From contig NC_068981.1 of assembly GCF_001194135.2 (NCBI RefSeq), forward strand, positions 94,106,360 through 94,170,359: DNA of 64,000 bases, given 5' to 3'. Within the stretch, counting starts at the first letter, position 1. The number at the start of each line of letters is the position of its first letter. Of this stretch, positions 510 to 51,000 are shown piece after piece. The stretch is from Octopus bimaculoides (taxonomy: Eukaryota). The position numbers and the translations under genes were made by a program. Below the pieces are notes generated by a model. It was not told where the DNA came from. It ran no database searches and was given only the letters and a program-made list of their open reading frames with translations.

Positions 510-1744
510 TTTTATTTTTACATAATGCACAAGTAATGACATTAGTCGTGTTACACTCATATTTGGAGGTGAAATTCAGATCTCAGAGGTAAAAATATAA
601 CATTTTGCACTTACTGTAACATTAAGAAAAAACAAAAAGAAACATGATCATTGCTTACAAACTTGTGTTATAACATTATGCAACAGCTGTACTTGATGGA
701 ATTTTCCCTGCATTTTGTGGAATTTTCCAATTGTGGTGAGTCATTTGAAATGCTTTCAGATTTTGGAGATTTTCAGTTTTGGGAATTTGAGACAAAAAGT
801 GTTTTCAACCCAGCATATCAGCCATGGTAAATATCTTTATTAATCCTCTAAATTATATAATATGAAACTGTTTGACTTCAATCCTTAAAGCTAATGTTTT
901 TACTAACAGAAGTACATAATGTAAATAACAATTTGAATAAAAAAAAAACTATGATGAATTAATTTAACAATAATAACCTCGCATACAAATCATATGTAGA
1001 AACTCAATAAAAAATTGTTATAGTATCATAGTACTTGAACAAAACAAGTATAATGACAAATCTAAACATATTTTGGTATTGTTAGAATAACTCCTCCTTT
1101 TCTTGTGAGATTGTGTCATTTAAAAAAAAAAATGCTCTTATTATCAATGATGAAAGACATGATTGTATGGTAAGAAGGTTGTTTCTTAACTTTATGGTTC
1201 TGGGTTCAGTCCCACTATGTGGTACCTTGGGTGAGTGTTTCCTGCTATAACCTCAGGCTAACTAAAGTCTTGTGAGTGGATTTGGTAGATGGAAACTGAA
1301 AGAAGCCCATCCTATATGTGTGTGTGTGTTTGTGTTAGCGTTGGTTCCCCACCACTGCTTGACAACTGGTGTTGATGTGTTTACATCCCTGTAACTTAGC
1401 GGTTCAGCAAAAGAGACCAATAGAATAAATACTAGGCTTTAAAACAAAAATAAGTACTGAGGTCGATTCACATGAGTGAAAATTCTTCAAGGTGGTGCCC
1501 CAGCATGGCCACAGTCAAATGACTGTAACAAGTAAAAGTTAAAAAGTAAAAGATCTTGGCTTATTACATCAAGAATGATAGTGTCCATTTTACTATTTAG
1601 ATTTCCTGCAACAAATGTCCACATGTGCGTGTGTGCGTATGTGGTGACATGTCTTTCAGAAGTTGCCATCAACAGATACTATCAAAACCTGTATTTATGA
1701 TATCTACAGTTTCAAGTTTGTCCCAGTTTGATTCCTATTATTTG

Positions 1745-11030: not shown

Positions 11031-11880
11031 GAAGAATCAGGTTTTTAAATACGCTCATCACAAACACAAACTACAGAATAGAAAAAGGTAATTTCAATTG
11101 GATTTGATCTGTAATTTTGTGCATATACACAGCAAAAAAATAACATAATTCGTACACAAATTTTACCTAGAGTGTGTGTGTGCCAGCCAGAGAAAGTTAT
11201 TTTATAGCATTTCATTTGAAGCAGCAAAGTTGTCAACTTGATCATATGAGATCATATGATTGTTCGTTAAGTTCTGTAGAAAATTTTTATTTCTTTATCC
11301 TTTGAAGAGAGGAGAAAGTGAGAGCACATAGTGAAAGAGAGGAGAAAGTGAAAGATGTATGTACATGTATATGAAATGGATGTGAGTGAAGGAGTGTGTT
11401 GTCATGTATGTATTTTCTTGCATGTATGTGTAAGTGGCATTCATTTAATGTTGCAGAAATCATTTCTATGGTCACAGATTCTTCAGATGAAGTGGGACAG
11501 AGATGTGGAATTTTTTCTATCTCTGCACCTGAAGGAGTGCATGTGCTATATATACCTTCATTTAAGGCTGTTGGCTGTCATGCAAGTGTAGTGTCTTGAG
11601 ATAATATATGTATATGTAATATGTGTAATACTTCTGTATAATATGTATTTACCTAATCCATGCTAACATGGAAAAAAAATATGTAAATGAACAAATAACA
11701 TATGTAATGTATATTCTAGTATTTCTTTTATATGCATTCAGATTTAATTTTTGTAGAAAGACATTATATACTCAAAGATTACCTTAGAATAATTGTATTT
11801 TCTAAGTTGATATTCATAAAAAGAATGCTTATTTTATGGAAACTGTTTTCCTTTTTTTCAGATATTGGAATGAAGAAAAA

Positions 11881-12648
11881 ATGTCTAGTATCCGAAGTGT
11901 TCCAAATTGTATTGTTCTGAAACAAAAACAGTTTATTTTCTACATGCCAAAAAGTTGGCCTGCATCTACTATTCGTATAGAGCCTGATCAAAAATGTACT
12001 ACAATTCATTTTAGAACAGTCACAAAGGATGTGACCTCAAAAAAGAAACGTGACTTTTTATATTCTGTTAAAGATCAACTGAAAAATTTAGTAAAAAGGA
12101 CAAATAATTTTGGTAATGTTGCTACTCTGCGCGAAACTGACATTAATCAGATGATCAAAAATTATTATAAATTTGTTGAAGCTTACTTGGAAAACTTGAA
12201 ACATGCTAAGGATACTAAGCACCCACCTTCCAAAAATTCATATACAAGCATTCAAAAAACTAAAGATTTGTCTACTTTTGAAGAGATGATGAAGGAGACT
12301 CATGAAAGTGTAGCTTCTTTTTATGAATCCAAGAAAAATGTTCGTAGTCAAGTTTCTGCAAAATCTATCAGCACAGCTTCAGAGGATTTAAACAAAAATG
12401 AACCAAACCTCAATAAATTGGTATCCTGGGTGACTGTGAAGAAAGATTTAGATGAAGAGAAAACAGATGTGAAAAAAAAGCCTGTGATACGGAAAGATTT
12501 TATTTCACGGACAGCTGTTGAAAATAGGTCTCGTGCTTTAGTCAACAATCTGAAATTAGCTCAGTCAATTTCATCTAAAATAACTCGGATAGATGATTTA
12601 AACAAACACCTCATGATATACCCTGCGTCTCGGTCTATTGCAAAAAAG
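11881..12648 (+). CDS. PNPLA8: PNPLA8 first coding exon (N-terminal region, MSSIRSVPNC...ITRIDDLNKHLMIYPASRSIAKK)
   Basis: Long ORF. Polypyrimidine tract with acceptor AG at 11860-11861, ATG at 11881, donor GT at 12649 (phase 0). The exon end resembles the pre-patatin region of vertebrate iPLA2-gamma as recalled. Start codon choice is inferred. Confidence 0.85.
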
Positions 12649-13349
12649 GTAAATTTAAATTACTGTGTTTTTGATGGCCTATAAGGTGCACATCTTATGT
12701 CAGAAAATTAGCCATCTTTTATAAATCTAAGGTCAGAGTTGGGTTTTTGGTAAGTGATAGTGCAAGATAGGGCCTGTCAAAACTGAAATACATTTTATAA
12801 ACCCATGCAACTTATTAGCCATCAAATATTGTGGGTTTTCTTTTTTTTAACTTAAAATGAAAAAAAATAATGTTAGTGCTGATGAAAGAATATATTTTTA
12901 TAAGTTTAGGTAAAATTAGACAGGATAACTTGGTGCATCAAGGCAGTTTAAGAAACATTGAAGATATGAGAGTTTTATTATAATTTTCACCAAAAAATAT
13001 TGAATGAAAGTTTTTTTTTTTAAATTGTTTGATTAGAAAAAAAATTTTAATTGCTAACTAATTTCTGACAAAATATATTTTAATTATTTGTTATGCAAAT
13101 TAGATAATCATGGATCAATGTTTATAGTGATTTTGTATAACAGTTTGCTTGAGCTAGCCAATGGCCCAGAGATTGATGATTTGACTCTTAGGACTAACTT
13201 TTTAATACGGTATTATATCTGGATATTAAATGTGTCTGTAAGTGTAGCATGAACCTACAGACAAGTTAAAACTATCAGCTGACTAGCTACAACCATCCTA
13301 TCTTTTATTTTTGGCTATGCTATTTAAAAACAAATTAGAACTTATTTAA

Positions 13350-34768: not shown

Positions 34769-35475
34769 GAATTGATAATGAAGAGGAGAGTGATTTGTTC
34801 ACATCTAAAACATTTTTATTAAAATGTTCTCGGGCCGACCAAAGACTTGTGAGTGGATTTGGTAGATGGAAACTGAAAGAAGCCTGTCGTATATATATAT
34901 GTGTGTGTGTGTTTGTGTGTCTGTATTTGTCCCCCCCCCACCATCGCTTGACAACCGATGCTGGTGTGTTTACATCCCCGTAACTTAGCAGTTGGGCAAA
35001 AAGAGATCGATAGAATAAGTACTAGGCTTACAAAAGAATAAGTCCTGGGGTCGATTTGTTCGACTAAAGGCGGTGCTCCAGCATGGCCGCAGTCAAATGA
35101 CTGAAACAAGTAAAAGAGAGTACAACATATATAACTCTGACCTACATATGTTTTGACTGCACATTGCTCTGTATGCAATTATGCATTCTAGTCACTGCAA
35201 TTTCATCAAGCGTCCACCACTCACTTTTTTTCCAAAGTGAACTGATTTAAACAAGCGTCCTGAATACCAGCGCAGGATGCTTGTCTGAAGCAGTTCACTT
35301 TAAAAACACTGAGTGATGGACCCTTGATGAAATTGCAGTGACAAGAATGCATAATTACATACAGAGCAATGTGCAGTCAAAACATATGTAGGTCAGAGTT
35401 ATATATGCTGTAGAAAACTTTAATAAAAATGCTTTGGATGTGATTAAATCTCTACTTTCCTCTTCATTATCAAAT
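34769..35475. repeat. Foldback (long inverted repeat, ~210-bp arms) interrupted by a SINE A copy at 34821-35120
   Basis: 35121-35260 pairs with 35270-35412, and 34769-34820 pairs with about 35412-35475. Confidence 0.85.
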
Positions 35476-40525: not shown

Positions 40526-40704
40526 TCAGTCTGTTAACGTAAATCTGATACTCTCTAAGCCGGGAGTGAAACATTGTTGGCTCAAGTTGTTTTCCGTGTA
40601 GAATTCAGCCCAGGCTGGATAGTATTTACTGACTGCACCGCCCCAGCTCCAGCCATTGGGGATTAATATATTTGTTAAACCTTTAGAAATAATCTCATTA
40701 TAAC
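40526..40704 (-). CDS. EEPD1: EEPD1 last coding exon (GYNEIISKGLTNILIPNGWSWGGAVSKYYPAWAEFYTE...FTLTD*)
   Basis: ttccag acceptor, phase 1, TGA stop. Strong match to recalled EEPD1 GLTNPWIPDNWSWGGVASEHCPVLAEFYTE. AATAAA on the minus strand at 40442-40447. Confidence 0.93.
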
Positions 40705-40829
40705 CTGGAAAAGAAATGAAGAAATATATAAATAAAACAAAAAATCTTTAAATTCAGCATTCCACAAAAAGACAAAAAAGCAAGATATCTATTATATCAC
40801 ATTTCAACCAGAAAAATGAGAACAACATA

Positions 40830-41540
40830 CGAAACAATCCAAATTATTTGACTGTATTTAACAAAGTTTTCTAACAAAGTTTCCCCATATATATGCCTCC
40901 TTCTGTCCAACATCCTTTGGATTGAGAGTCTGATGTCAAATTGATCTACCACAGCATGTATCATCCACACATAACCAAGACACTTCATGGCAGACTTGCA
41001 CTTGCTCCATGAACAAAAGCTTCAAAAACATCCTTCATCATACAAACCAAAGACAGAGTCTTGTATTACACTTCTTCCTTAAGCATGAACAACACAAAGC
41101 TAACCATAATATTGCTACAAAAGCTAGGCCTCAATCTCTGACAATCTCTCATGGTGACCTCATGTATATAACATTACTAAAATTGTATTCCAAAGACTAG
41201 GTTTCCTCTTGAAGGCCAGAACATACATGGGCCATTATTATTTGTCTCTGCAAAGTTCATGTGCAATCACATTAGAATACAAGTCACACACTCAGTCTTG
41301 ACTTTATCAAAAAATGGTTGCTGATAAGAAAAGATTGAATATGCTAGATATTCAAATTGAGCATCAAACCATATCGATCATATCTGTCTAAGAAGTTTGA
41401 AAAGATTCCAACCATTGCTTTCTTCCTCTGTCTAGCACAGAGAAAAACAGTCTGCTTCTCTGAACTAACAAGCAGCCATGTAACCTTCAGTAAAATACCC
41501 ATGCATTTATCTCTCCTCACTAACATCTTTGCGGTGTCTT
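40830..41540 (-). mobile_element. Heavily decayed RT relic, probably Penelope-like
   Basis: On the minus strand, ordered remnants QF...YIHEVTMR (compare YxQxxGVAMG), VA(N)IM and YV[tg]DDT (YVDD after removing a 2-nt duplication). Confidence 0.4.
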
Positions 41541-42936
41541 AATCACCAATCACTACATTAAAGACTTTTATTCTAATTCTTTTTTTCCACTGGATCTCTG
41601 CTTTTCCTTCTTTGTCTACTAATATCATTCTTCAAAAGTATTAACTATATAACAACTACCCTTCTAACAATCAGATGGGCCTGCAAAGTTCAAGGAACCA
41701 CCTTTCCCCTAATTAAATCTAATTGGTTAAATTAAATTTGAAACAGGGATTTGCTATGACTTACAAAATGATTAACCAGTGTAAATTAAAAATATTAAAG
41801 CTAATAGGTAATGCAGAAGGTTTTTTTAATTCAAAATAGACATTCATTTCTCTTATTTTAGCTGTCTTATCTTGTCAAAGACTATATTTTCACAGATAAA
41901 ATTACAAATAAGATCAAGTATATGGTTACCCCCACAGGGCAGTATGATAAAACTTCTAATCTATAATCTAAAATGTGATATAACCACACACCAAAATACA
42001 TAGAGTTTCAAATACAATTCAAAGGTATCAAAGTACAAGGACCTTTGGATTGAAACAAAATAAATTAAAGAGAATGGAAATGTAAACAACAATAATTAAA
42101 GCATTAAATATGAAAAACAAAAATAGGGGCCACATCTAGGCCAACAAAATTGCACATAGAGAAATAGTAATACCATACAGAGTAGAGATTCTACTGAAGG
42201 CAATTTCAAAACAAATAATAGTCCACATTACATCATATAGAGAGAACAATAAACATCTTAACCAACGACAATAAGCAATAAATATCACAACACATTATAT
42301 TTTCAACATTATATGTTTTAGCCCGTTAACATTTAGATTTCTTTGTCAAATGTTTTGAATTAATTATGCATCATCTCATAGCTTTGGGATTTCAGTGATC
42401 ATCATCATTTAACATCTGCTTTCCAAGCTAGCATAGGTTGGACAATTTGATTGGGGACTGGTGAACCAGACTCCAATCTGACCTGGCAGAGTTTCTACAG
42501 CTGGATGCCCTTCCTAATGCCAGCCACTCCGAGAATGTAGTGGGTGCTTTTTATGTGCCACTGGCACGAGGGCCAGTCTGGTGGTACTGGCAAAGGTCAC
42601 GCTCAAGGCGAAGCTGGAAACGATCGCGCTCAAATGGTGCTTTTTACGTGCCACCGGCACGGAAGCGAGACCGCTGCTCTGGCAGTGATCCCGCTTGAAT
42701 GAATATTTTTAGAATGACATTGTTGGATAAGTATAAATCCAACAATGTCATTTTAGAATGACATTATGAGATAACTAGATCTGGTTGATTCGAACATAAA
42801 ACAAATAGAATATTTAGGCTTTTAAATGTTAAAGGGTTAAAACTGAAACCAAAATAAAAACTAGTCAATTCTCTCAAGAAAAGAGTTTGAAGTTTCTTTA
42901 ATCCTAATGTGTATTTTTATGTATCTTCAACAGTAT

Positions 42937-43331
42937 TGTTGTTGTTGTTGTTGGCACTCCGTCGCTTACGACATCGAGGGCTCCAGTTGATCTGATCAAC
43001 GGAACAGCCTGCTCGTGAAATGAATGTGCAAGTGGCTGAGCACTCCACAGACACGTGTACCCTTAACGTAGTTCTCGGGGATATTCAGCGTGACACAGTG
43101 TGACAAGGCTGGCCCTTTGAATTACAGGCACAACAGAAACAGGAAGTAAGAGTGAGAGAAAGTTGTGGTGAAAGAATACAGCAGGGTTCGTCACCATCCC
43201 CTGCCGGAGCCTCGTGGAGCTTTTAGATGTTTTTGCTCAATAAACACTCACAACGCCCGGTCTGGGAATCGAAACCGCAATCCTATGACCGCGAGTCCGC
43301 TGCCCTAACCACTGGGCCATTGCACCTCCAC
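42937..43331 (-). mobile_element. SINE family B copy with 12-bp TSD
   Basis: Near-identical to 31013-31395; cttcaacagtat at 42925-42936 and 43332-43343. Confidence 0.9.
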
Positions 43332-44057
43332 CTTCAACAGTATGCACATGTCTAAATTAACAAAAATCATCTAATATGCTAACACAGGTAGATACTCTTC
43401 TCACTACCAGACAGTGAGCTGTGATTAGAGTGACAGCTGTTTCTTGTCAAGTTAACAGGAACAAAGGCACAGGCTTAGCTATGCAGTTAAGAAATTTGCT
43501 TTGGAACCATGTGGTTTCAGTTCCACTGCTTTGCAACTTGTGCAAAAGTCTTCTACTATAACTCCAATCTGACCAATGCCTTTTGAGTAAATTTGGTAGC
43601 TGGAAACTGAGTGGAAGTCCATTGTGTGTGTGTGTGAGTGTCTTTGTGTTTGTCCCCACCACTACAGCCTGATAACTTGTGGTGATATGTTTACACCTCT
43701 ATAACTTAGCAGTTCAGCAAAAGAGACTGATAAAGTAAGTATCAGCCTTAAAAAAGAAGTACTGGGCTCAATTTGTTTGACTAATTCTTTTAAGGCGATG
43801 CCCCAGAGTGTCTGGTGTTCACTGACTGAAACAAGTGAAAGATAAAGATTAGCCTGTTGATGAAAAGCTTTTTCAAATTTGGGCATTTCATACTATGGAA
43901 GATAGGCAAAAAATTATTGGGATTAACGTTTGCATATTCTAATTTCTTGTCAGAAGTAGTTAGTTCTTATTTTACTTTCTTCTTGGAAAACATTTACAAC
44001 TGTTAACAACTTTAGATAATGTTAGAAAGAATTTTTTTTAAAAAAAAGGACAAGTAC

Positions 44058-44276
44058 CTGTATATAAGTGCTTTGAATTTTTATTGAACCAAATGTTTCC
44101 TGCCATTGTTTTGGAACAAGCTAAATGGCTACACAAACTGACACTGCTATTGTAGCTACTGTTACTTCTTTTGAGATGTGGTTGACTAACACTGCGATTC
44201 AACTCAAGAGGTAACATGCTAGGTTTTTCAGTGACTACACACTGAATGTAACCATGTTCTTGCAGTAATTCTTTTA
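44058..44276 (-). CDS. EEPD1: EEPD1 exon (KELLQEHGY...MAGNIWFNKNSKHLYT)
   Basis: 219 nt open frame, ttttcag acceptor and gtactt donor, phase 1 to 1. GNIWFNK corresponds to recalled DNIWISK. Confidence 0.9.
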
Positions 44277-46923
44277 CTGAAAAATAAAAGTAAAATATGT
44301 TAGATCAATACCTGGGAAGGTTTTGTTTTCATATTTGGTTTGCAAGATTCTAGATGTGATGAACTCATATGCTGAAACAGATTTTGTTATGTCTTGGGAG
44401 GGTTATCAAACCAATAATAAATATGTGCACTGGTTTCATTTCATTGTTTTTTTATTAATCAATTTCTTAACATTTAATGTATTAGTTAAACCATTGTTCA
44501 ATTAATTGCTAGGTTAACCTACCAGTGATCTCATGAGATCACTTAAAAATTACAAATTTCGTAATTATCTGTCAATATTTACACATATCTAACCTTTTTG
44601 CTATATCTACTAGGTATATTTCTCTGATATTCAAATGAGGTTTGCTAATTTTTCACCCAATATCTTGCTTATTTCTATTTAAAATGTTATTTTGATCATT
44701 CCAGCGTGTTTCTAAGGTAGTTTTATGCTAGAAATCCCAGTTAATAGAATTATGGGAGGTAATGGGTTAATTAGTCAATCAATTAGTTAGGTTTGTCAAA
44801 GTTCTTTCATTGTCATTTTCAACTTCACCAATGACAAGCCCTCTCCACTGCAGGTCTGCTTCAGACTTGTCTGAGGCCTTGTGCCAAAATAAGAAAGAAT
44901 GATTGGCATAATGGCCCTCCCAAGATACAACAAAATATGGGAAGGTGTTATAAGTCTTCTGCAGATCTTTAGTATAAAGCATCATATATTGACTGAAATA
45001 AGTAACAGTTGCATATAAATATCCATTAATAGCAGTCTTTTACCTTATGTAAAACACAAATCATCGCTTTATGTCCACTTTCCATGTCGGCATGGGTTGG
45101 CTGGATTGATATAATTTAATTCAATTCTTATAAGAAGCCACTACTTTCACAGATTAGTGCTTGTAAATACCAAGCCAAAAGGACATGCATGAGCACCAAT
45201 CTATGAGTAAAGTGGGTTACAATAACAACCAATTCAGAAAATAGCAGCTCATCTATCCTATGCTACAATGGAAAATGGACAGAAAATGCTGCCGATGTTG
45301 CCAACCATGAGGATGATCTAAGTTTTTTTTTTTTTTTGATGGCAATAAACTGCTTGAAACTAAAGTTTTAGCTCTAATTGTAAAAATTAAAGGAAAATAA
45401 TTCTGGGAGGTGATTTTTTAAAAACTTGTTATGACGAATGATAAATGTCGCTTTAAAAGTTTAATTTTTTAAAAAAATGTTTACTGGCTTCCTAAAAACA
45501 CAATGAGAATTTGTTTTCTATTTTCACACAAACATTTGGATAATGTTTGTCTTGCTTAATGGGCTCTTATGAGATTTTTGATTTTTTTTTATGAATAAAG
45601 TTTACCCCCCAGTTTCTGCTGGGAAATCTTAGGAGAAGTGACATAAAAAGAGAAATTAAGATTTATGCAAATAGTTCAAATTATTTTACTTTTCAAACAA
45701 AAAAAATCATGATATATTTATAAACTGGCAGGTTAGTAATAAACTGTCATCATTATCATCATCGTCGTTTAACGTCCGCTTTCCATGCTAGCATGGATTG
45801 GACGATTTGACTGAGGACTGGTGAACCAGATGGTTACACCAGGCTCCAATCTGATTTGGCAGAGTTTCTACAGTTGGATGCCTTTCCTAACGCCAACCAC
45901 TCCGAGAGTGTAGTGGGTGCTTTTACGTGCCACCAGCATGAAGGTCAGTCAGGAGGTACTAGCAACGGCCATGCTCGAAATGGTGTTGGCATAAATTTGG
46001 ATTGGAGATAAATCACCACTTCTATTTTCATTTGTAGCATATATGTTTCTGAAACAGAACTTGACATTTGAAGAACTCCTGAGGGAATAGTCATTGAATA
46101 ATTTTCAGGTTTCATTTGGTAAAAGAGTATAAGGAAAATGATAAAAAGTTCACTATTCACAATCACAGTATTTAATATCATTTAATCATGAACAATTACA
46201 CCAGACATTTTATAAACTGTTTCAGAGTTTGTGGGTATAGTCATTGGTTGTGAAGTTTGCTTTGCAGCCCTGTGGTTCAGGGCTTGACTCTAATGCACAA
46301 CACTTTGGGCAAATGTCTTTCACTGTAACCTCAAAGTCGACTAATGTTCTTGAGAAGAGAAACTGTGTGGAAACCCATGTGTGTGTGTGAATGTATGTAT
46401 ATATGTATACACATACATTGTTTAATGTCCACCTGTCAATGCTTGCATGGGCCAGACAGAATTTACTGGAACATGTATGTATATATATATACACATATAT
46501 ATGTAATGCATGTGTAGGTGTATACCACCACCATCTATTTACTTTAGGAAAAAAAATGGTAACTTAGCTAGTCAATAACTAAAGATTAATAAGATGTTGA
46601 AATAAGTACTGGGGCTTAAATGACTGACTAAAACTCTTGAAGGCAGTGCCTCATCATGATTGCAATCCAGTGATTGAAACTAGCGAAAAATAAACAAAAT
46701 ATATGTAGCAAATATTGTTTTTTTTTTGTATGTGTGTGTGTGTTTGTGTTTCAATAATTTGTTATAATAATTTAGAGGCAGACATGTAAGTATTAAATTA
46801 TCAATACAAATCCAGGGCTTCAAACCTAACCACAAATATTGGTAATTAAGCAATAAAGTAGCAATAATAAGGCAATGATATAGAAATGTTTATATTTAAT
46901 TAAGAAAATATAATGCAACAAAC

Positions 46924-46977
46924 CTTCTAGTCCAAGTTCAACATCCAGATTACCAAAAATAATTATGTGATTTTCCT
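46924..46977 (-). CDS. EEPD1: EEPD1 micro-exon (EENHIIIFGNLDVELGLE)
   Basis: 54 nt, ctttcag acceptor and gtttgt donor, phase 1 to 1. IIIFGNL aligns with the EEP GDF strand (recalled human VIILGDFG). Confidence 0.85.
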
Positions 46978-47576: not shown

Positions 47577-48008
47577 NNNNNNNNNNNNNNNNNNNNNNNN
47601 NNNNNNNNNNNNNNNNNNNNNNNNNNNNNNNNNNNNNNNNNNNNNNNNNNNNNNNNNNNNNNNNNNNNNNNNNNNNNNNNNNNNNNNNNNNNNNNNNNNN
47701 NNNNNNNNNNNNNNNNNNNNNNNNNNNNNNNNNNNNNNNNNNNNNNNNNNNNNNNNNNNNNNNNNNNNNNNNNNNNNNNNNNNNNNNNNNNNNNNNNNNN
47801 NNNNNNNNNNNNNNNNNNNNNNNNNNNNNNNNNNNNNNNNNNNNNNNNNNNNNNNNNNNNNNNNNNNNNNNNNNNNNNNNNNNNNNNNNNNNNNNNNNNN
47901 NNNNNNNNNNNNNNNNNNNNNNNNNNNNNNNNNNNNNNNNNNNNNNNNNNNNNNNNNNNNNNNNNNNNNNNNNNNNNNNNNNNNNNNNNNNNNNNNNNNN
48001 NNNNNNNN
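47577..48008. other. Assembly gap (N run); another at 17988-18088 and 10-N gaps at 3921, 16465, 29456, 34242, 50404, 53595 and 61759
   Basis: N characters; several 10-N gaps are flanked by duplicated sequence. Confidence 0.99.
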
Positions 48009-51000
48009 AGGTAACAAGAATGACCACCAAATTCAAAGGGGACGATGAACAAAAACTTGAGAACTTGGCTAATATAATCTATCAGGAAGGAGAGAAAAGA
48101 TTTGGATCTGAAGCAGCGGGGAATGGAGAATCATCAGCAAATGGCGGACCATCGAGGAGAGAAAGATGGATTGCAAAGATACAAGAACAGAAGAAAAACT
48201 CAGAACCAGACGGAGGGATGCAAAGGAGGAGGAAAGAGAAGGGTTAAAACAACTATATGAAGAGATAAAAAAGAGGCATCGAAAACAACTAAGAAAAGAA
48301 AGAAGGAAGAACAGAAGAAAGGACAGAGAAAAGAACTCTTGTATTTTTGTAAACAACCCATAACAATATGCTAAACGTTTGTTTACTGAAAGTAAAAGTG
48401 GAAGATTAGATTGCACTAAAGAAGAGCTCGAACACCATCTTAAAGGGACATACAGAGACGCTAATAGAAATAAAGTACTTCCTGAAATGCTCGGGCTGAA
48501 GAAACCATCTGAACCAAGAGTACCATTTGATTTGAGTGACACCAGACGGAAGGAAATGGATAAGTTCATTAGAAAATTAAGAGCAAAATGTTCACCAGGG
48601 AATAACGGAGTTAGCTACAAGGTTTATAAGTATTGCCTAAAATTGCATTTACAACCGTTTGCACTGATAAGGGAAATGTAGAAGAAGAAAGATGTAGTAG
48701 ACTGATTGAGTACAGCTGAAGGTATCTATTTACCTAAAAAGGAGGCAAAAACACTAGGGCAATTCAGACCCATTTCACTATTAAATACTGATGGGAAAAT
48801 CATGTTTGGAATTATTGCTAGGCGAATCATAAAATTCATACAACATAGAACATGCATTTGCCATCTGGGAACCTATTAACTGTGCAAAACAACTTAAGAA
48901 AAACCTGTACATTGTATGGCTAGATCTTGCCAATGCATATGGATCTGTTCCACACACACTAATTCAAGCAGTTATGGACTTCTTTTGGATTCCAGAAGAT
49001 GCTCAATGAATGCTCATGTGTTAGTTACTACGACAACTTGAGGATTAGATTTACAGCAAGAAAGTTCACAACAGAATGGCAACGACTTGAAGTAGGTATT
49101 GCAGCTGGATGCATGATATCAGTTATCTTATTTGTGCTAGTCATGGAGATGTTACTAAGATCAACAAACTGTGAGAAATCTGTTACAAAGACACCATTAA
49201 GGGCTTTTATGGATGATGTTACTGTATTATCAGAAAGTAGAGAAGCAGCAGATGGAATGTTAGAGCAGTTGGACGAACTAATAGGATGGGTGAGAATGAA
49301 ATTTCGTGAAAGGAGACCAAAAAGAAATGAAATTCAGATAGGAGGTGAAGATATACCAACAGTGAAAGAACAATCAGTAAAGAGTACAGAGATTTACTAA
49401 ATGATAAGCAGCAAAGCAAAGAAACACATGATTTAGTGGAACAAAGAGCAAAGGCAATTGACAGAACAACATTACCAGGGAAATTCAAATGTTAGATATG
49501 GCAATTTGGGCTGTACCCAAGGATAATGTGGCCATCACAAATGTACGAAATAGCCTCGAGTAGAGTAGAAAGGATGGAACAAAGATGCAGTGTGTTTATC
49601 AGAAAATAGCTTGGTCTTCCAAAACCACTGAATACAACTTCACTATATGGAAAACCCATGCTGCAACTACCAATAACATTAATTGCTGAAGAATATAAGG
49701 CAGGAAAGGCAAGGACACTAATGATGGTAAAGTATTCGAAAGATCAGAGCATCCGAGAAAACCTTCCAAAAGTATGAACAGGGAGGAAATGGAAAGCAGA
49801 AGAGGCAGTAAACAGGGCGATTGGAAAGCTAAGGCATACCAATATCGTTGGAGCGATGCAAGAAGCAAGAGCCAGTCTAGGGTCACACAATTTCAAGCCA
49901 TTTTGCAACAGCAGTGTAAAAGAGATGAAAGAGGCAGTGGTACACGAAGTGAGAAAGGAGGAAGAAGAAAGGCGAAATATACATTTGGTGCAATGTAGTC
50001 AACAGGGACAGTGCCTCAGATGGGAGGAATATGTAGTCCGTTGCAGAATCTCATGGAAAAAAACTTTGGGCTTGGGATCAAGCAAGGACATCCTTTCTGA
50101 TCAAGTCTACCTTCGACATTTTACCCTCACCGGCGAATTTAGTCCGGTGGAACATACAAACAACTGATGAATGTAGATGTGGAAAGAAAGCAACGGTGAG
50201 ACATGTTCTGTCAAACTGCAGGCTAACACTAGACAGGTATACATGGGGTCACAATCAAGTCCTCGGCATCATAAGTGCAGCACTCAAGGAGAAGATCGAG
50301 GGATATAATAGGGGAGTGTACCCAAAAGTGGCAAAGCGCAGAAAAAAATGTACTTCCAGAAGAAGAGAAAAGGACATAAGGCCAGGTCTTCAAAAAAAAT
50401 ATANNNNNNNNNNAGAAGATCGAGGGATATAATAGGAGAGAGTACCCAAAAGTGGCAAAGCGCAGAAAAAAATGTACTTCCAGAAGAAGAGAAAAGGACA
50501 TAAGGCCAGGTCTTCAAAAAAAATATAAGAGACAGATGAAATATGGAAGGGATACTGGGAGCCGGTCACGGATTTGGAAAAACTGTTAATATTTCCACTC
50601 ATAAAAACAGCAAAAAGACCAGACTTAATCCTATGGAACACAGAATGGAAAATTGGAATTTTGCTAGACCTGACAGTGCCATAGGAAGAGAATATCGCTA
50701 ATGCAGAGCAACGGGAGGAGAAGAGGTATGAGAGATTAACTGAAGAGTGTAGAGAACAGAGATGGACTGTTGAGTATTACCACCTGGCAGTGGTGGCTAG
50801 GGGCTTCATTGAAAGGAAAATGATAACGCTATTCAAAAGAAAATTTACATTTTCGAGCTCAGAGCTGAGAAAAGTAATAAGGAGGATACCAGAGGCAGTC
50901 GAAAAAGCCAGCTTCTATATATAGTTGAAGTGAGAAGACTGAAAATGGCTTGAAAGCCATAACATGCTAACTGGGAAATAGCTTCGCTAAGTGAGGCTGG

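What the first reader, a model, noticed from the sequence alone, without database searches (positions are those of the whole stretch)
40526..46977. EEPD1 appears to be a catalytically degenerate pseudo-nuclease
Seen: GNLD where the EEP GD[F/L]N strand lies (46924-46977), AGNIW where recalled human EEPD1 has LDNIW (44058-44276), and SKYYP where human has SEHCP (40526-40704). Yet the reading frame, splice sites and the flanking WSWGG/AEFYTE sequence are intact. Established: these positions correspond to APE1 D210, D283 and D308/H309, which are needed for catalysis in EEP-fold enzymes. Inference: purifying selection on a non-catalytic role. A-to-I editing could restore Asp (AAT to GAT) and Glu (AAA to GAA), but could not create the His or the second Asp.
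Basis: partly seen in the sequence, partly recalled or inferred. Interest (0 to 1): 0.7.

Follow-up and report, generated by a model that had tools for sequence, protein, structure and literature searches.

The report
Octopus EEPD1: a dead nuclease domain
The window holds the last six exons of the octopus EEPD1 gene, whose nuclease-like domain has lost four of its six catalytic motifs yet has stayed under strong selection in octopuses and cuttlefish, a lineage-specific and extreme case of the "pseudo-nuclease" state published for human EEPD1 in 2026.

Summary
On the minus strand, six canonical GT-AG exons (60994 to 40526) translate exactly to residues 347-614 of Octopus bimaculoides EEPD1 (XP_052824235).

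**Catalytic motifs.** GNLD, AGNIW and SKYYP sit where canonical EEPD1 has GDFN, YDNIW and SDHCP.

**Age of the losses.** Octopus, Argonauta, the cuttlefish Sepia esculenta and a fourth, unidentified cephalopod-like transcript share all six replacements. Every chiton, gastropod and bivalve examined keeps the full canonical set, so the losses predate the octopus-cuttlefish split.

**Still a working gene.**
- dN/dS is about 0.11.
- The predicted structure still matches the human EEPD1 EEP-domain crystal structures (TM 0.8).
- The Trp-handshake dimer residues are intact.
- The Pfam nuclease model no longer detects the domain.
- The EEP domain, unlike the HhH region, evolved unusually fast on the cephalopod stem.

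**Novelty.** The interpretation (a non-catalytic role under purifying selection) is supported, but the idea is not new. Shen et al. (NAR 2026) already describe EEPD1 as a pseudonuclease with variable active-site motifs across Metazoa. The cephalopod case is not mentioned in any paper I could search. It is a natural test bearing on the current dispute over whether EEPD1 is a nuclease.

The RNA-editing idea is possible at the codon level but untested. Cuttlefish transcripts read the unedited codons.

The parts
60896..60994 (-). EEPD1 coding exon, aa 347-379 (ICDELNHPRLSNVRKWKGRNRKWEYVMANPNIE), phase 0/0
   Evidence: tblastn with human EEPD1 gives E=1.4e-4. AG/GT flanks were read. Exact match to P0121.
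57879..58007 (-). EEPD1 coding exon, aa 380-422 (NVEHSGFIYD...ALSGFFQ)
52246..52372 (-). EEPD1 coding exon, aa 423-465. It carries EEP motif iii, where the canonical His is replaced by Tyr434 (TAT 52339-52337), followed by His435 (CAC 52336-52334).
   Evidence: Found through P0121. Splice sites. Alignment.
46924..46977 (-). EEPD1 coding exon, aa 465-483. It carries motif iv as Asn474-Leu-Asp476 (AAT 46951-46949, GAT 46945-46943) in place of Asp-Phe-Asn.
44058..44276 (-). EEPD1 coding exon, aa 483-556. It contains a cephalopod-specific Ser-rich insertion (about 44169-44116, KRSNSSYNSSVSLCSHLAC), predicted to be disordered. It also carries motif v, with Gly542 (GGA 44100-44098) in place of Asp.
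   Evidence: AF2 pLDDT is about 30 for residues 499-538.
40526..40704 (-). Last EEPD1 coding exon, aa 556-614 plus stop. The Trp-handshake hairpin is conserved: Trp574 (40651-40649) and Trp576 (40645-40643). Motif vi reads Lys582-Tyr583 (AAA 40627-40625, TAC 40624-40622) in place of Asp-His. The stop TGA is at 40528-40526.

Best explanation
The window carries the 3' two-thirds (six of eight coding exons, aa 347-614) of Octopus bimaculoides EEPD1. No second copy was found. It is on the minus strand.

Its C-terminal EEP-fold domain is a dead-enzyme module. In the common ancestor of octopuses and cuttlefish, four of the six EEP catalytic motifs were replaced:
- His(iii) to Tyr
- Asp-x-Asn(iv) to Asn-x-Asp/Glu
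- Asp(v) to Gly
- Asp-His(vi) to Lys/Arg-Tyr/Phe

Only the Asn(i) and Glu(ii) metal and phosphate ligands remain. Both of those lie in exons outside the window.

Shown here: the fold, the reading frame, the exon structure and the residues of the EEPD1-specific tryptophan-handshake dimer interface are all kept. These are the equivalents of human K275, N278, W522 and W524. The domain is under strong purifying selection.

Inferred: the domain no longer hydrolyses phosphodiesters. It probably works as a non-catalytic dimerisation and scaffold module that pairs the two N-terminal (HhH)2 DNA-binding arms, as proposed for human EEPD1 ('clamping, not cleaving').

The basic residues that the human model places along the DNA backbone (K347, K481, K487) are also changed in cephalopods, and a disordered Ser-rich loop is inserted next to them. 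DNA contact through the pseudo-active-site face is therefore less certain in cephalopods than dimerisation is. The Lys/Arg at the former metal-ligand position could bind phosphate without a metal; that is speculation.
For: - Exact gene model with canonical splice sites.
- Identity to the annotated O. bimaculoides EEPD1.
- Motif table and alignment blocks. All five cephalopod sequences read N-E-Y-N-(D/E)-G-(K/R)-(Y/F). All 20-plus other molluscs, two nemerteans, a starfish, a shark and chicken read N-E-H-D-N-D-D-H.
- One of the cephalopod sequences is a spliced Sepia esculenta RNA-seq contig. This dates the loss to before the octopus-cuttlefish split and shows the gene is expressed.
- dN/dS is 0.111 [0.068-0.164] for Octopus against Argonauta over the window exons. 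It is 0.109 [0.066-0.150] for the EEP domain between Sepia and L002.
- Exon sizes are identical in Argonauta.
- Pfam PF03372 no longer matches the Octopus or Sepia protein but matches Haliotis at 1.8e-8.
- The AF2 model has pLDDT 84-93 in the EEP core.
- Its best structural matches are the human EEPD1 EEP-domain crystals, with E about 1e-23 and TM 0.80-0.82.
- The dimer residues read KNWW in 223 of 242 family members, cephalopods included, while the catalytic pattern varies widely.
- Acceleration is domain-specific. The cephalopod EEP domain is 33-40% identical to other molluscs, which share 55-69% among themselves. The HhH region is 52-69% identical.
- Mechanistic context: D210N and N212A in APE1 cost at least 10^4-fold activity, and purified human EEPD1 shows no nuclease activity (PMC12988330).
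Against: - No biochemical data exist for any cephalopod EEPD1.
- An acidic residue persists two positions downstream of the lost Asp(iv), at Asp/Glu476, on the same face of the strand. Tyr at motif iii is what APE1 itself uses. Asn(i) and Glu(ii) remain. A weak or altered activity therefore cannot be excluded from sequence alone.
- Hromas et al. (PMC13153614) report AP-endonuclease activity for human EEPD1 that depends on H404 and D448. The dead-enzyme reading of the family is therefore contested.
- The DNA-clamp role is extrapolated from human data. Three basic residues of the proposed human DNA path are not conserved in cephalopods.
- Predicted coordinates could not be inspected, so active-site geometry rests on alignment only.
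- No Nautilus sequence was available, so the loss is dated only to before the Octopodiformes-Decapodiformes split.
Confidence: 0.8

Rival explanations
1. The cephalopod EEP domain is still a hydrolase that uses a rearranged catalytic set. This would be swapped Asn474/Asp476, APE1-like Tyr434, the neighbouring His435, and the retained Asn303/Glu337 metal site. It might act on a different substrate, or use a nucleophile other than water.
For: - An acidic residue is conserved at i+2 (Asp in octopods, Glu in decapodiforms), and a further Glu at i+4.
- Tyr at motif iii is the APE1 state.
- Motifs i and ii are intact.
- The replacement residues are conserved or conservatively substituted across the four cephalopod species, with strong purifying selection on the domain.
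- Shen et al. themselves leave open an undetected reaction that does not need water.
Against: - His(vi) and its orienting Asp(v) are both gone, replaced by Tyr/Phe and Gly.
- The metal-ligand Asp(vi) is replaced by Lys/Arg.
- Even human EEPD1, with five of six motifs, shows no or disputed activity.
- The Pfam EEP model no longer recognises the domain.
- Conservation of the six replacements is no higher than the 56% background identity between octopus and cuttlefish EEP domains would predict.
Confidence: 0.08
2. A-to-I RNA editing conditionally restores part of the active site in some tissues: Asn474 to Asp through AAT to GAT, and Lys582 to Glu through AAA to GAA.
For: - The codons allow it. 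AAT is conserved in all four cephalopods. AAA or AAG occurs in three of them.
- Coleoids recode extensively (general knowledge, not tested here).
Against: - Editing cannot recreate His(vi), Asp(v) or His(iii).
- The fourth cephalopod has Arg (AGA) at the motif-vi position, which would edit to Gly.
- All Sepia-cluster RNA-seq-derived protein variants read Asn and Lys at these sites: 11 carry the full motif pattern and 12 carry Lys-Phe at motif vi. These variants come from more than 50 contigs. There is therefore no majority editing in those samples.
Confidence: 0.03
3. The gene is a fast-evolving paralogue, and a canonical, catalytically intact EEPD1 exists elsewhere in cephalopod genomes.
For: - The EEP domain is unusually divergent, 33-40% identical to other molluscs.
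- Only annotated proteomes and assembled transcripts were searched, not whole genomes.
- A few unassigned lophotrochozoan-like sequences (P0292, P0151, P0160, P0314) have no named close relative.
Against: - A search with the octopus protein returned only one Octopus cluster, one Argonauta protein and two decapodiform-type clusters.
- No second cephalopod-named protein appeared among the top 120 hits, where a canonical copy at about 400 bits would rank.
- The canonical unnamed mollusc-like hits are 72-92% identical to named bivalves.
- The HhH region shows normal orthologue-level identity.
Confidence: 0.05
4. The locus is a decaying pseudogene or an annotation artefact.
For: - Catalytic motifs are lost.
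- The Pfam EEP match is lost.
Against: - The open frame is intact across six exons with canonical splice sites.
- Exon sizes are identical in Argonauta.
- A full-length spliced transcript exists in Sepia RNA-seq.
- dN/dS is about 0.1.
- A confident EEP fold is predicted.
Confidence: 0.01

Closest known systems
Human EEPD1 as a pseudonuclease dsDNA clamp (Shen et al., NAR 2026, PMC12988330; PDB 9yi2, 9ysf, 9yxy)
   Same: - Orthologous protein with the same architecture: N-terminal Gly2 lipidation motif, two (HhH)2 domains and a C-terminal EEP fold.
- The Trp-handshake dimer residues are conserved (K275, N278, W522, W524 equivalents).
- The predicted fold matches the crystal structures at TM 0.8.
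- The active site is incomplete while the gene is conserved.
- The paper already states that all six active-site motifs vary across Metazoa while the dimer residues do not.
   Different: - Human lacks only Asn(iv) (DFG) and has Glu for Asp(vi). Cephalopods lack the canonical residues of motifs iii, iv, v and vi.
- Cephalopods also lack the K347, K481, K487 and R510 equivalents.
- They have Leu at W517.
- They carry a disordered Ser-rich insertion of about 20 aa before motif v.
- The paper says invertebrates retain DXN and does not mention cephalopods or molluscs in its main text.
Canonical-motif EEPD1 of other molluscs (Haliotis, Liolophura, Pecten, Saccostrea, Babylonia and others)
   Same: Same gene and same domain order. 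The HhH region is 52-69% identical. The dimer motifs are identical.
   Different: These keep all six motifs (N, E, H, D-F-N, D, D-H) and still match Pfam PF03372. Their EEP domains are 55-69% identical to one another but only 33-40% identical to cephalopods.
APE1, TDP2 and DNase I: active EEP-fold phosphodiesterases
   Same: Same two-layer alpha/beta sandwich fold. TDP2 and DNase1L3 are the next-best structural matches. Tyr at motif iii is the APE1 state.
   Different: The octopus protein lacks the Asp-x-Asn water-activating pair, the Asp-His pair and the orienting Asp. Sequence identity is 10-13%. It has the dimer hairpin and HhH domains, which these enzymes lack.
Independently degenerate EEPD1s of spiders, beetles and other arthropods
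   Same: Motifs iii-vi are lost convergently while KNWW is kept. Spiders read S / D-F-I / S / K-H. The beetle Aromia reads M / D-F-S / T / P-Y. His(vi) to Tyr/Phe recurs.
   Different: The residue choices differ and the origins are independent. Asp(iv) is usually kept in arthropods but lost in cephalopods.

Membership tests
EEPD1 orthologue | Architecture: N-terminal tandem (HhH)2 domains plus a C-terminal EEP-fold domain | tested here: met
   P0121, which contains the window exons exactly, has two HHH_3 hits at E=5e-34. Its EEP-fold C-terminus matches 9yxy and 9ysf at E about 1e-23. The HhH part lies outside the window.
EEPD1 orthologue | Trp-handshake dimer elements (human K275, N278, W522, W524, and the L513/T514/N515/P519/G525/G526 hairpin) | tested here: met
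   All are conserved in the alignment. W522 and W524 are encoded at 40651-40643. Exceptions: W517 is Leu, as in several bivalves, and R510 is Ser. Dimerisation itself was not tested.
EEPD1 orthologue | N-terminal myristoylation Gly2 with nearby Cys residues | tested here: met
   P0121 starts MGGMNSCC, and G2 is nearly invariant in the alignment. This lies outside the window.
EEPD1 orthologue | Best hits are EEPD1, with a single copy per genome | tested here: inconclusive
   All significant PDB and database hits are EEPD1, and no second cephalopod protein was seen. Whole cephalopod genomes could not be searched.
Catalytically competent EEP hydrolase | Motifs i (Asn) and ii (Glu) | tested here: met
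   N303 and E337 of P0121 are present. They are encoded upstream of the window.
Catalytically competent EEP hydrolase | Motif iii His (Tyr in APE1) | tested here: inconclusive
   Tyr434 is at the His position, with His435 displaced by one residue. This is the APE1-like state, but it is non-canonical for EEPD1.
Catalytically competent EEP hydrolase | Motif iv Asp-x-Asn | tested here: not met
   The motif reads Asn474-Leu-Asp476, and Asn-Ile-Glu in decapodiforms.
Catalytically competent EEP hydrolase | Motif v Asp | tested here: not met
   Gly542 in all cephalopods.
Catalytically competent EEP hydrolase | Motif vi Asp-His | tested here: not met
   Lys582-Tyr583, and Lys/Arg-Phe in decapodiforms.
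Catalytically competent EEP hydrolase | Match to Pfam PF03372 (Exo_endo_phos) | tested here: not met
   No hit at E<=0.01 for Octopus or Sepia. Haliotis gives 1.8e-8, above the curated cut-off.
Pseudoenzyme (pseudonuclease) | Enzyme fold retained, catalytic residues lost, gene under purifying selection | tested here: met
   Fold. Residues. dN/dS about 0.11.
Pseudoenzyme (pseudonuclease) | Absence of catalytic activity | not testable with these tools
   This needs a nuclease assay on recombinant protein.

The most novel reading that the evidence does not exclude
After losing catalysis in the coleoid ancestor, the EEP domain was rebuilt for a new job rather than merely kept as a dimer scaffold. 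Three observations fit this: a burst of domain-specific change; a remodelled pocket (Tyr, Asn, Asp/Glu, Gly, Lys/Arg, Tyr/Phe) then held for the whole time since octopuses and cuttlefish split; and a new disordered Ser-rich loop next to the former DNA path. The domain could be a metal-independent phosphate- or ligand-binding, phospho-regulated module specific to cephalopods. Molluscs would then offer a within-phylum pair of a possibly active EEPD1 and a certainly dead one, with which to settle what EEPD1 does.
Probability: 0.12. Interest if true: 0.6.

Novelty: new member of a known kind. Interest (0 to 1): 0.35.

Why it matters
Two 2026 papers disagree on whether EEPD1 is a nuclease. Hromas et al. 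report that activity depends on H404 and D448. Shen et al. find no activity and propose a DNA clamp.

Coleoid cephalopods are a natural mutant at exactly those residues, and also lack His(vi), Asp(v) and Asp(vi). They have nevertheless kept the gene under strong constraint since before octopuses and cuttlefish split. This shows that at least one conserved EEPD1 function needs no canonical EEP catalysis. It points to the dimer interface and the HhH arms as the selected parts.

Other molluscs keep a textbook-complete active site. That gives a tidy comparative system (abalone or oyster against octopus) for testing whether ancestral EEPD1 was an enzyme.

Tried and rejected
- The word-indexed protein search with the 149-aa window C-terminus found nothing. 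The query was too short or too divergent for the index. The exhaustive representative search found the family instead.
- Pfam on the C-terminal fragment gave no hit, even at E<=10.
- A vertebrate-based HMM and tblastn with human EEPD1 failed to find the motif-iii exon or any N-terminal exon in the window. The motif-iii exon was located only with the octopus protein.
- The small exon for aa 333-346 and exon 1 are not in the window.
- My first splice-threading of the Argonauta locus failed because the search window around the exon-1 donor was too narrow. Widening it gave a single solution.
- I looked for a Nautilus or other non-coleoid cephalopod sequence among the hits, using the Lys/Arg-Tyr/Phe motif-vi signature. 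None was found.
- I looked for cephalopods in the supplements of Shen et al. No supplement text is held.
- Literature searches for EEPD1 with 'octopus' or 'cephalopod' returned nothing.
- I asked whether the six replacement residues are themselves unusually conserved. Three identical and three conservative positions is what 56% background identity predicts, so I make no such claim.
- The pseudogene and alignment-artefact readings were rejected on the evidence given under the rival explanations.

Full report
**What is in the window**

That alignment places AGNIW on LDNIW and SKYYP on SEHCP. I verified the human sequence against 9yi2_A.

tblastn with the human protein found two more upstream exons. 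An exhaustive phmmer search of 1.84 billion representative proteins returned P0121. P0121 is a 614-aa protein that NCBI names EEPD1 of Octopus bimaculoides, XP_052824235. It revealed a sixth exon at 52372-52246.

Six exons, spliced at canonical sites, translate exactly to P0121 residues 347-614:
- 60994-60896
- 58007-57879
- 52372-52246
- 46977-46924
- 44276-44058
- 40704-40526

Exon 1 (both HhH domains and motif i) and a small exon carrying motif ii lie outside the window. The Argonauta hians locus (L003) has eight coding exons. Its last six have the same sizes as those in the window.

**The catalytic motifs**

Shen et al. (PMC12988330) define six EEP motifs and give the human EEPD1 residues:
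- N267 (i)
- E301 (ii)
- H404 (iii)
- D448-x-G450 (iv; APE1 D210/N212)
- D490 (v)
- E530-H531 (vi; APE1 D308/H309)

I made a 58-sequence MAFFT alignment in which the flanks around each motif are unambiguous. Five cephalopod sequences read N, E, Y, N-x-(D/E), G, (K/R)-(Y/F). They are O. bimaculoides, O. vulgaris, Argonauta hians, and two transcript-derived proteins about 58% identical to octopus.

Every other mollusc examined reads the fully canonical N, E, H, D-F-N, D, D-H. This covers a chiton, seven gastropods or gastropod-like sequences, and more than ten bivalves. Two nemerteans, Owenia, a starfish, a shark and chicken read the same.

One transcript (L001, run SRR19578112) comes from Sepia esculenta larval RNA-seq. 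The other (L002) is 86% identical to it, and its species is unknown. The replacements therefore predate the split between octopuses and cuttlefish. No nautiloid sequence was found.

Pfam's Exo_endo_phos model matches Haliotis EEPD1 at 1.8e-8. It gives no hit at E<=0.01 for the Octopus or Sepia protein.

**Is it still a working gene?**

Yes.
- Nei-Gojobori dN/dS is 0.111 (bootstrap 0.068-0.164; dS 0.64) for the window exons against Argonauta.
- It is 0.109 (0.066-0.150) for the EEP domain between the Sepia and L002 cDNAs.
- It is 0.063 for their N-terminal halves.
- The Sepia protein is encoded on a spliced 2.4-kb RNA-seq contig, and related variants occur on dozens of contigs.
- AlphaFold2 with a 46-sequence alignment gives pLDDT 84-93 for the EEP core. 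It gives about 30 for residues 499-538, the cephalopod-specific Ser-rich insertion.
- Foldseek's best PDB matches are the human EEPD1 EEP-domain crystals, with E 1e-21 to 2e-23, TM 0.80-0.82 on the target and 31% identity. TDP2 and other EEP enzymes follow.

**What is kept and what is not**

The residues of the EEPD1-specific tryptophan-handshake dimer are conserved in cephalopods. These are human K275, N278, W522 and W524, plus the L-T-N...P...W-S-W-G-G hairpin. Across 242 family members of at least 430 aa, 223 read K-N-W-W at these four positions.

The catalytic positions vary widely across the same set:
- Mammals have DFG.
- Frogs have Gly at Asp(iv).
- Spiders read S / D-F-I / S / K-H.
- The beetle Aromia reads M / D-F-S / T / P-Y.
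- His(vi) to Tyr/Phe recurs in many arthropod-like sequences.

This matches the published statement that all six active-site motifs vary in metazoan EEPD1 while the dimer residues are strictly conserved.

Cephalopods have also changed the equivalents of K347 (to Glu), K481 (to Pro), K487 and R510. The human model places the three lysines along the DNA backbone, and R510 acts as a structural clip.

**A domain-specific burst**

In the HhH region, cephalopods are 52-69% identical to other molluscs. That is the same range other molluscs show among themselves (55-70%). In the EEP domain, cephalopods are only 33-40% identical to other molluscs, which share 55-69%. Even starfish against molluscs is 49-53%.

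The EEP domain therefore changed rapidly on the coleoid stem and was then held under constraint again. Whether the burst reflects relaxed or positive selection was not tested.

**Mechanism**

Shown:
- The fold is retained.
- The canonical residues of motifs iii-vi are lost.
- The dimer elements and the HhH domains are retained.
- Purifying selection is strong.

Inferred:
- The domain cannot carry out canonical EEP phosphodiester hydrolysis. In APE1, D210N and N212A each cost at least 10^4-fold activity, and here the His-Asp pair is missing as well.
- It probably serves as a dimerisation and scaffold module for the HhH DNA-binding arms, in line with the 'clamp, not cleave' model for human EEPD1.
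- Lys/Arg at the former metal-ligand position might bind phosphate directly. This is speculation.

Caveats:
- An acidic residue sits two positions after the lost Asp, on the same side of the strand.
- Tyr at motif iii is what APE1 uses.
- Motifs i and ii are intact.
- No coordinates could be inspected and no assay exists.

**RNA editing**

The codons are AAT (Asn474) in all four species. At position 582 they are AAA, AAG, AAA and AGA. Editing could give Asp at 474 in all four species and Glu at 582 in three of them. It cannot recreate His(vi), Asp(v) or His(iii). All Sepia-cluster transcript-derived proteins read Asn and Lys at these sites, so majority editing is absent in those samples. Low-level or neural editing is untested.

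**Comparison with what is known, and novelty**

A pseudonuclease EEPD1 was published in March 2026 (PMC12988330). A competing paper reports nuclease activity that depends on H404 and D448 (PMC13153614).

The cephalopod case is not mentioned in the main text of the first paper, nor in any searchable paper. That paper's orthologue selection required an InterPro EEP annotation, which cephalopod proteins may fail.

I file this as a new member of a known kind. It is an extreme, old, lineage-wide instance of a published phenomenon. Its added value is as a natural mutant of exactly the residues in dispute, and as half of a within-phylum canonical-versus-dead pair.

**Verdict**

Interest is moderate (0.35).

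Noticed in passing
window 1315-1546, 15289-15474, 18125-18288, 18467-18700, 21588-21822, 22251-22446, 34890-35118, 43623-43846, 52604-52803, 53605-53760, 57200-57480: A SINE-like repeat of about 230 bp occurs 11 times on both strands at 70-89% identity. Several copies lie inside EEPD1 introns. Their translations give the recurring 'LFYLFQSFDCGHAGAPPLVEQIDPRTYS' pseudo-ORFs.
   Followed up: partly
window 48999-49400 (+): A reverse-transcriptase fragment (Pfam RVT_1, E=3.6e-8) lies antisense to EEPD1, inside the 5.3-kb intron between the exons at 52246 and 46977. The long low-complexity minus-strand ORFs at 48069-48614 lie nearby in the same intron.
   Followed up: partly
window 11836-12684 (+): A 282-aa ATG-initiated ORF, Lys/Ser-rich, has no Pfam match. 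It could be an exon of a neighbouring gene or a chance ORF.
   Followed up: partly
window 62727-63098 (-): A 124-aa stop-free stretch (…VELTVPHEDNMDAALARKIDRYVKLLEKCEDAGWKAEHFPIEVRCRGFVGH…) looks like a transposable-element protein fragment. It has no Pfam hit.
   Followed up: partly
window 47577-48008 and 61759-61768: There are assembly gaps, 432 N and 10 N, inside or just upstream of the EEPD1 part of the window. The small exon encoding aa 333-346, which carries the motif-ii Glu, was not found in the 3 kb upstream of 60994. It may lie beyond the window or in a gap.
   Followed up: partly
window 44116-44169 (-); P0121 residues 499-538: A cephalopod-specific Ser-rich insertion (KRSNSSYNSSVSLCSHLAC; longer in Sepia) sits just before motif v, in the region aligned to human K481-K487. 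It is predicted to be disordered and contains basic-x-x-Ser patterns, so it is a possible phospho-regulatory loop.
   Followed up: partly
related proteins P0100-P0118 (frogs), P0054/P0068/P0089/P0111 (marsupials), P0130/P0303/P0310/P0321 (spiders), P0129 (beetle): Catalytic residues of EEPD1 have been lost independently in other lineages. Frogs have Gly at Asp(iv). Marsupials have Cys at His(iii) and Asp at Glu(ii). Spiders and a beetle have lost three to five positions. The K-N-W-W dimer residues stay almost invariant throughout.
   Followed up: partly
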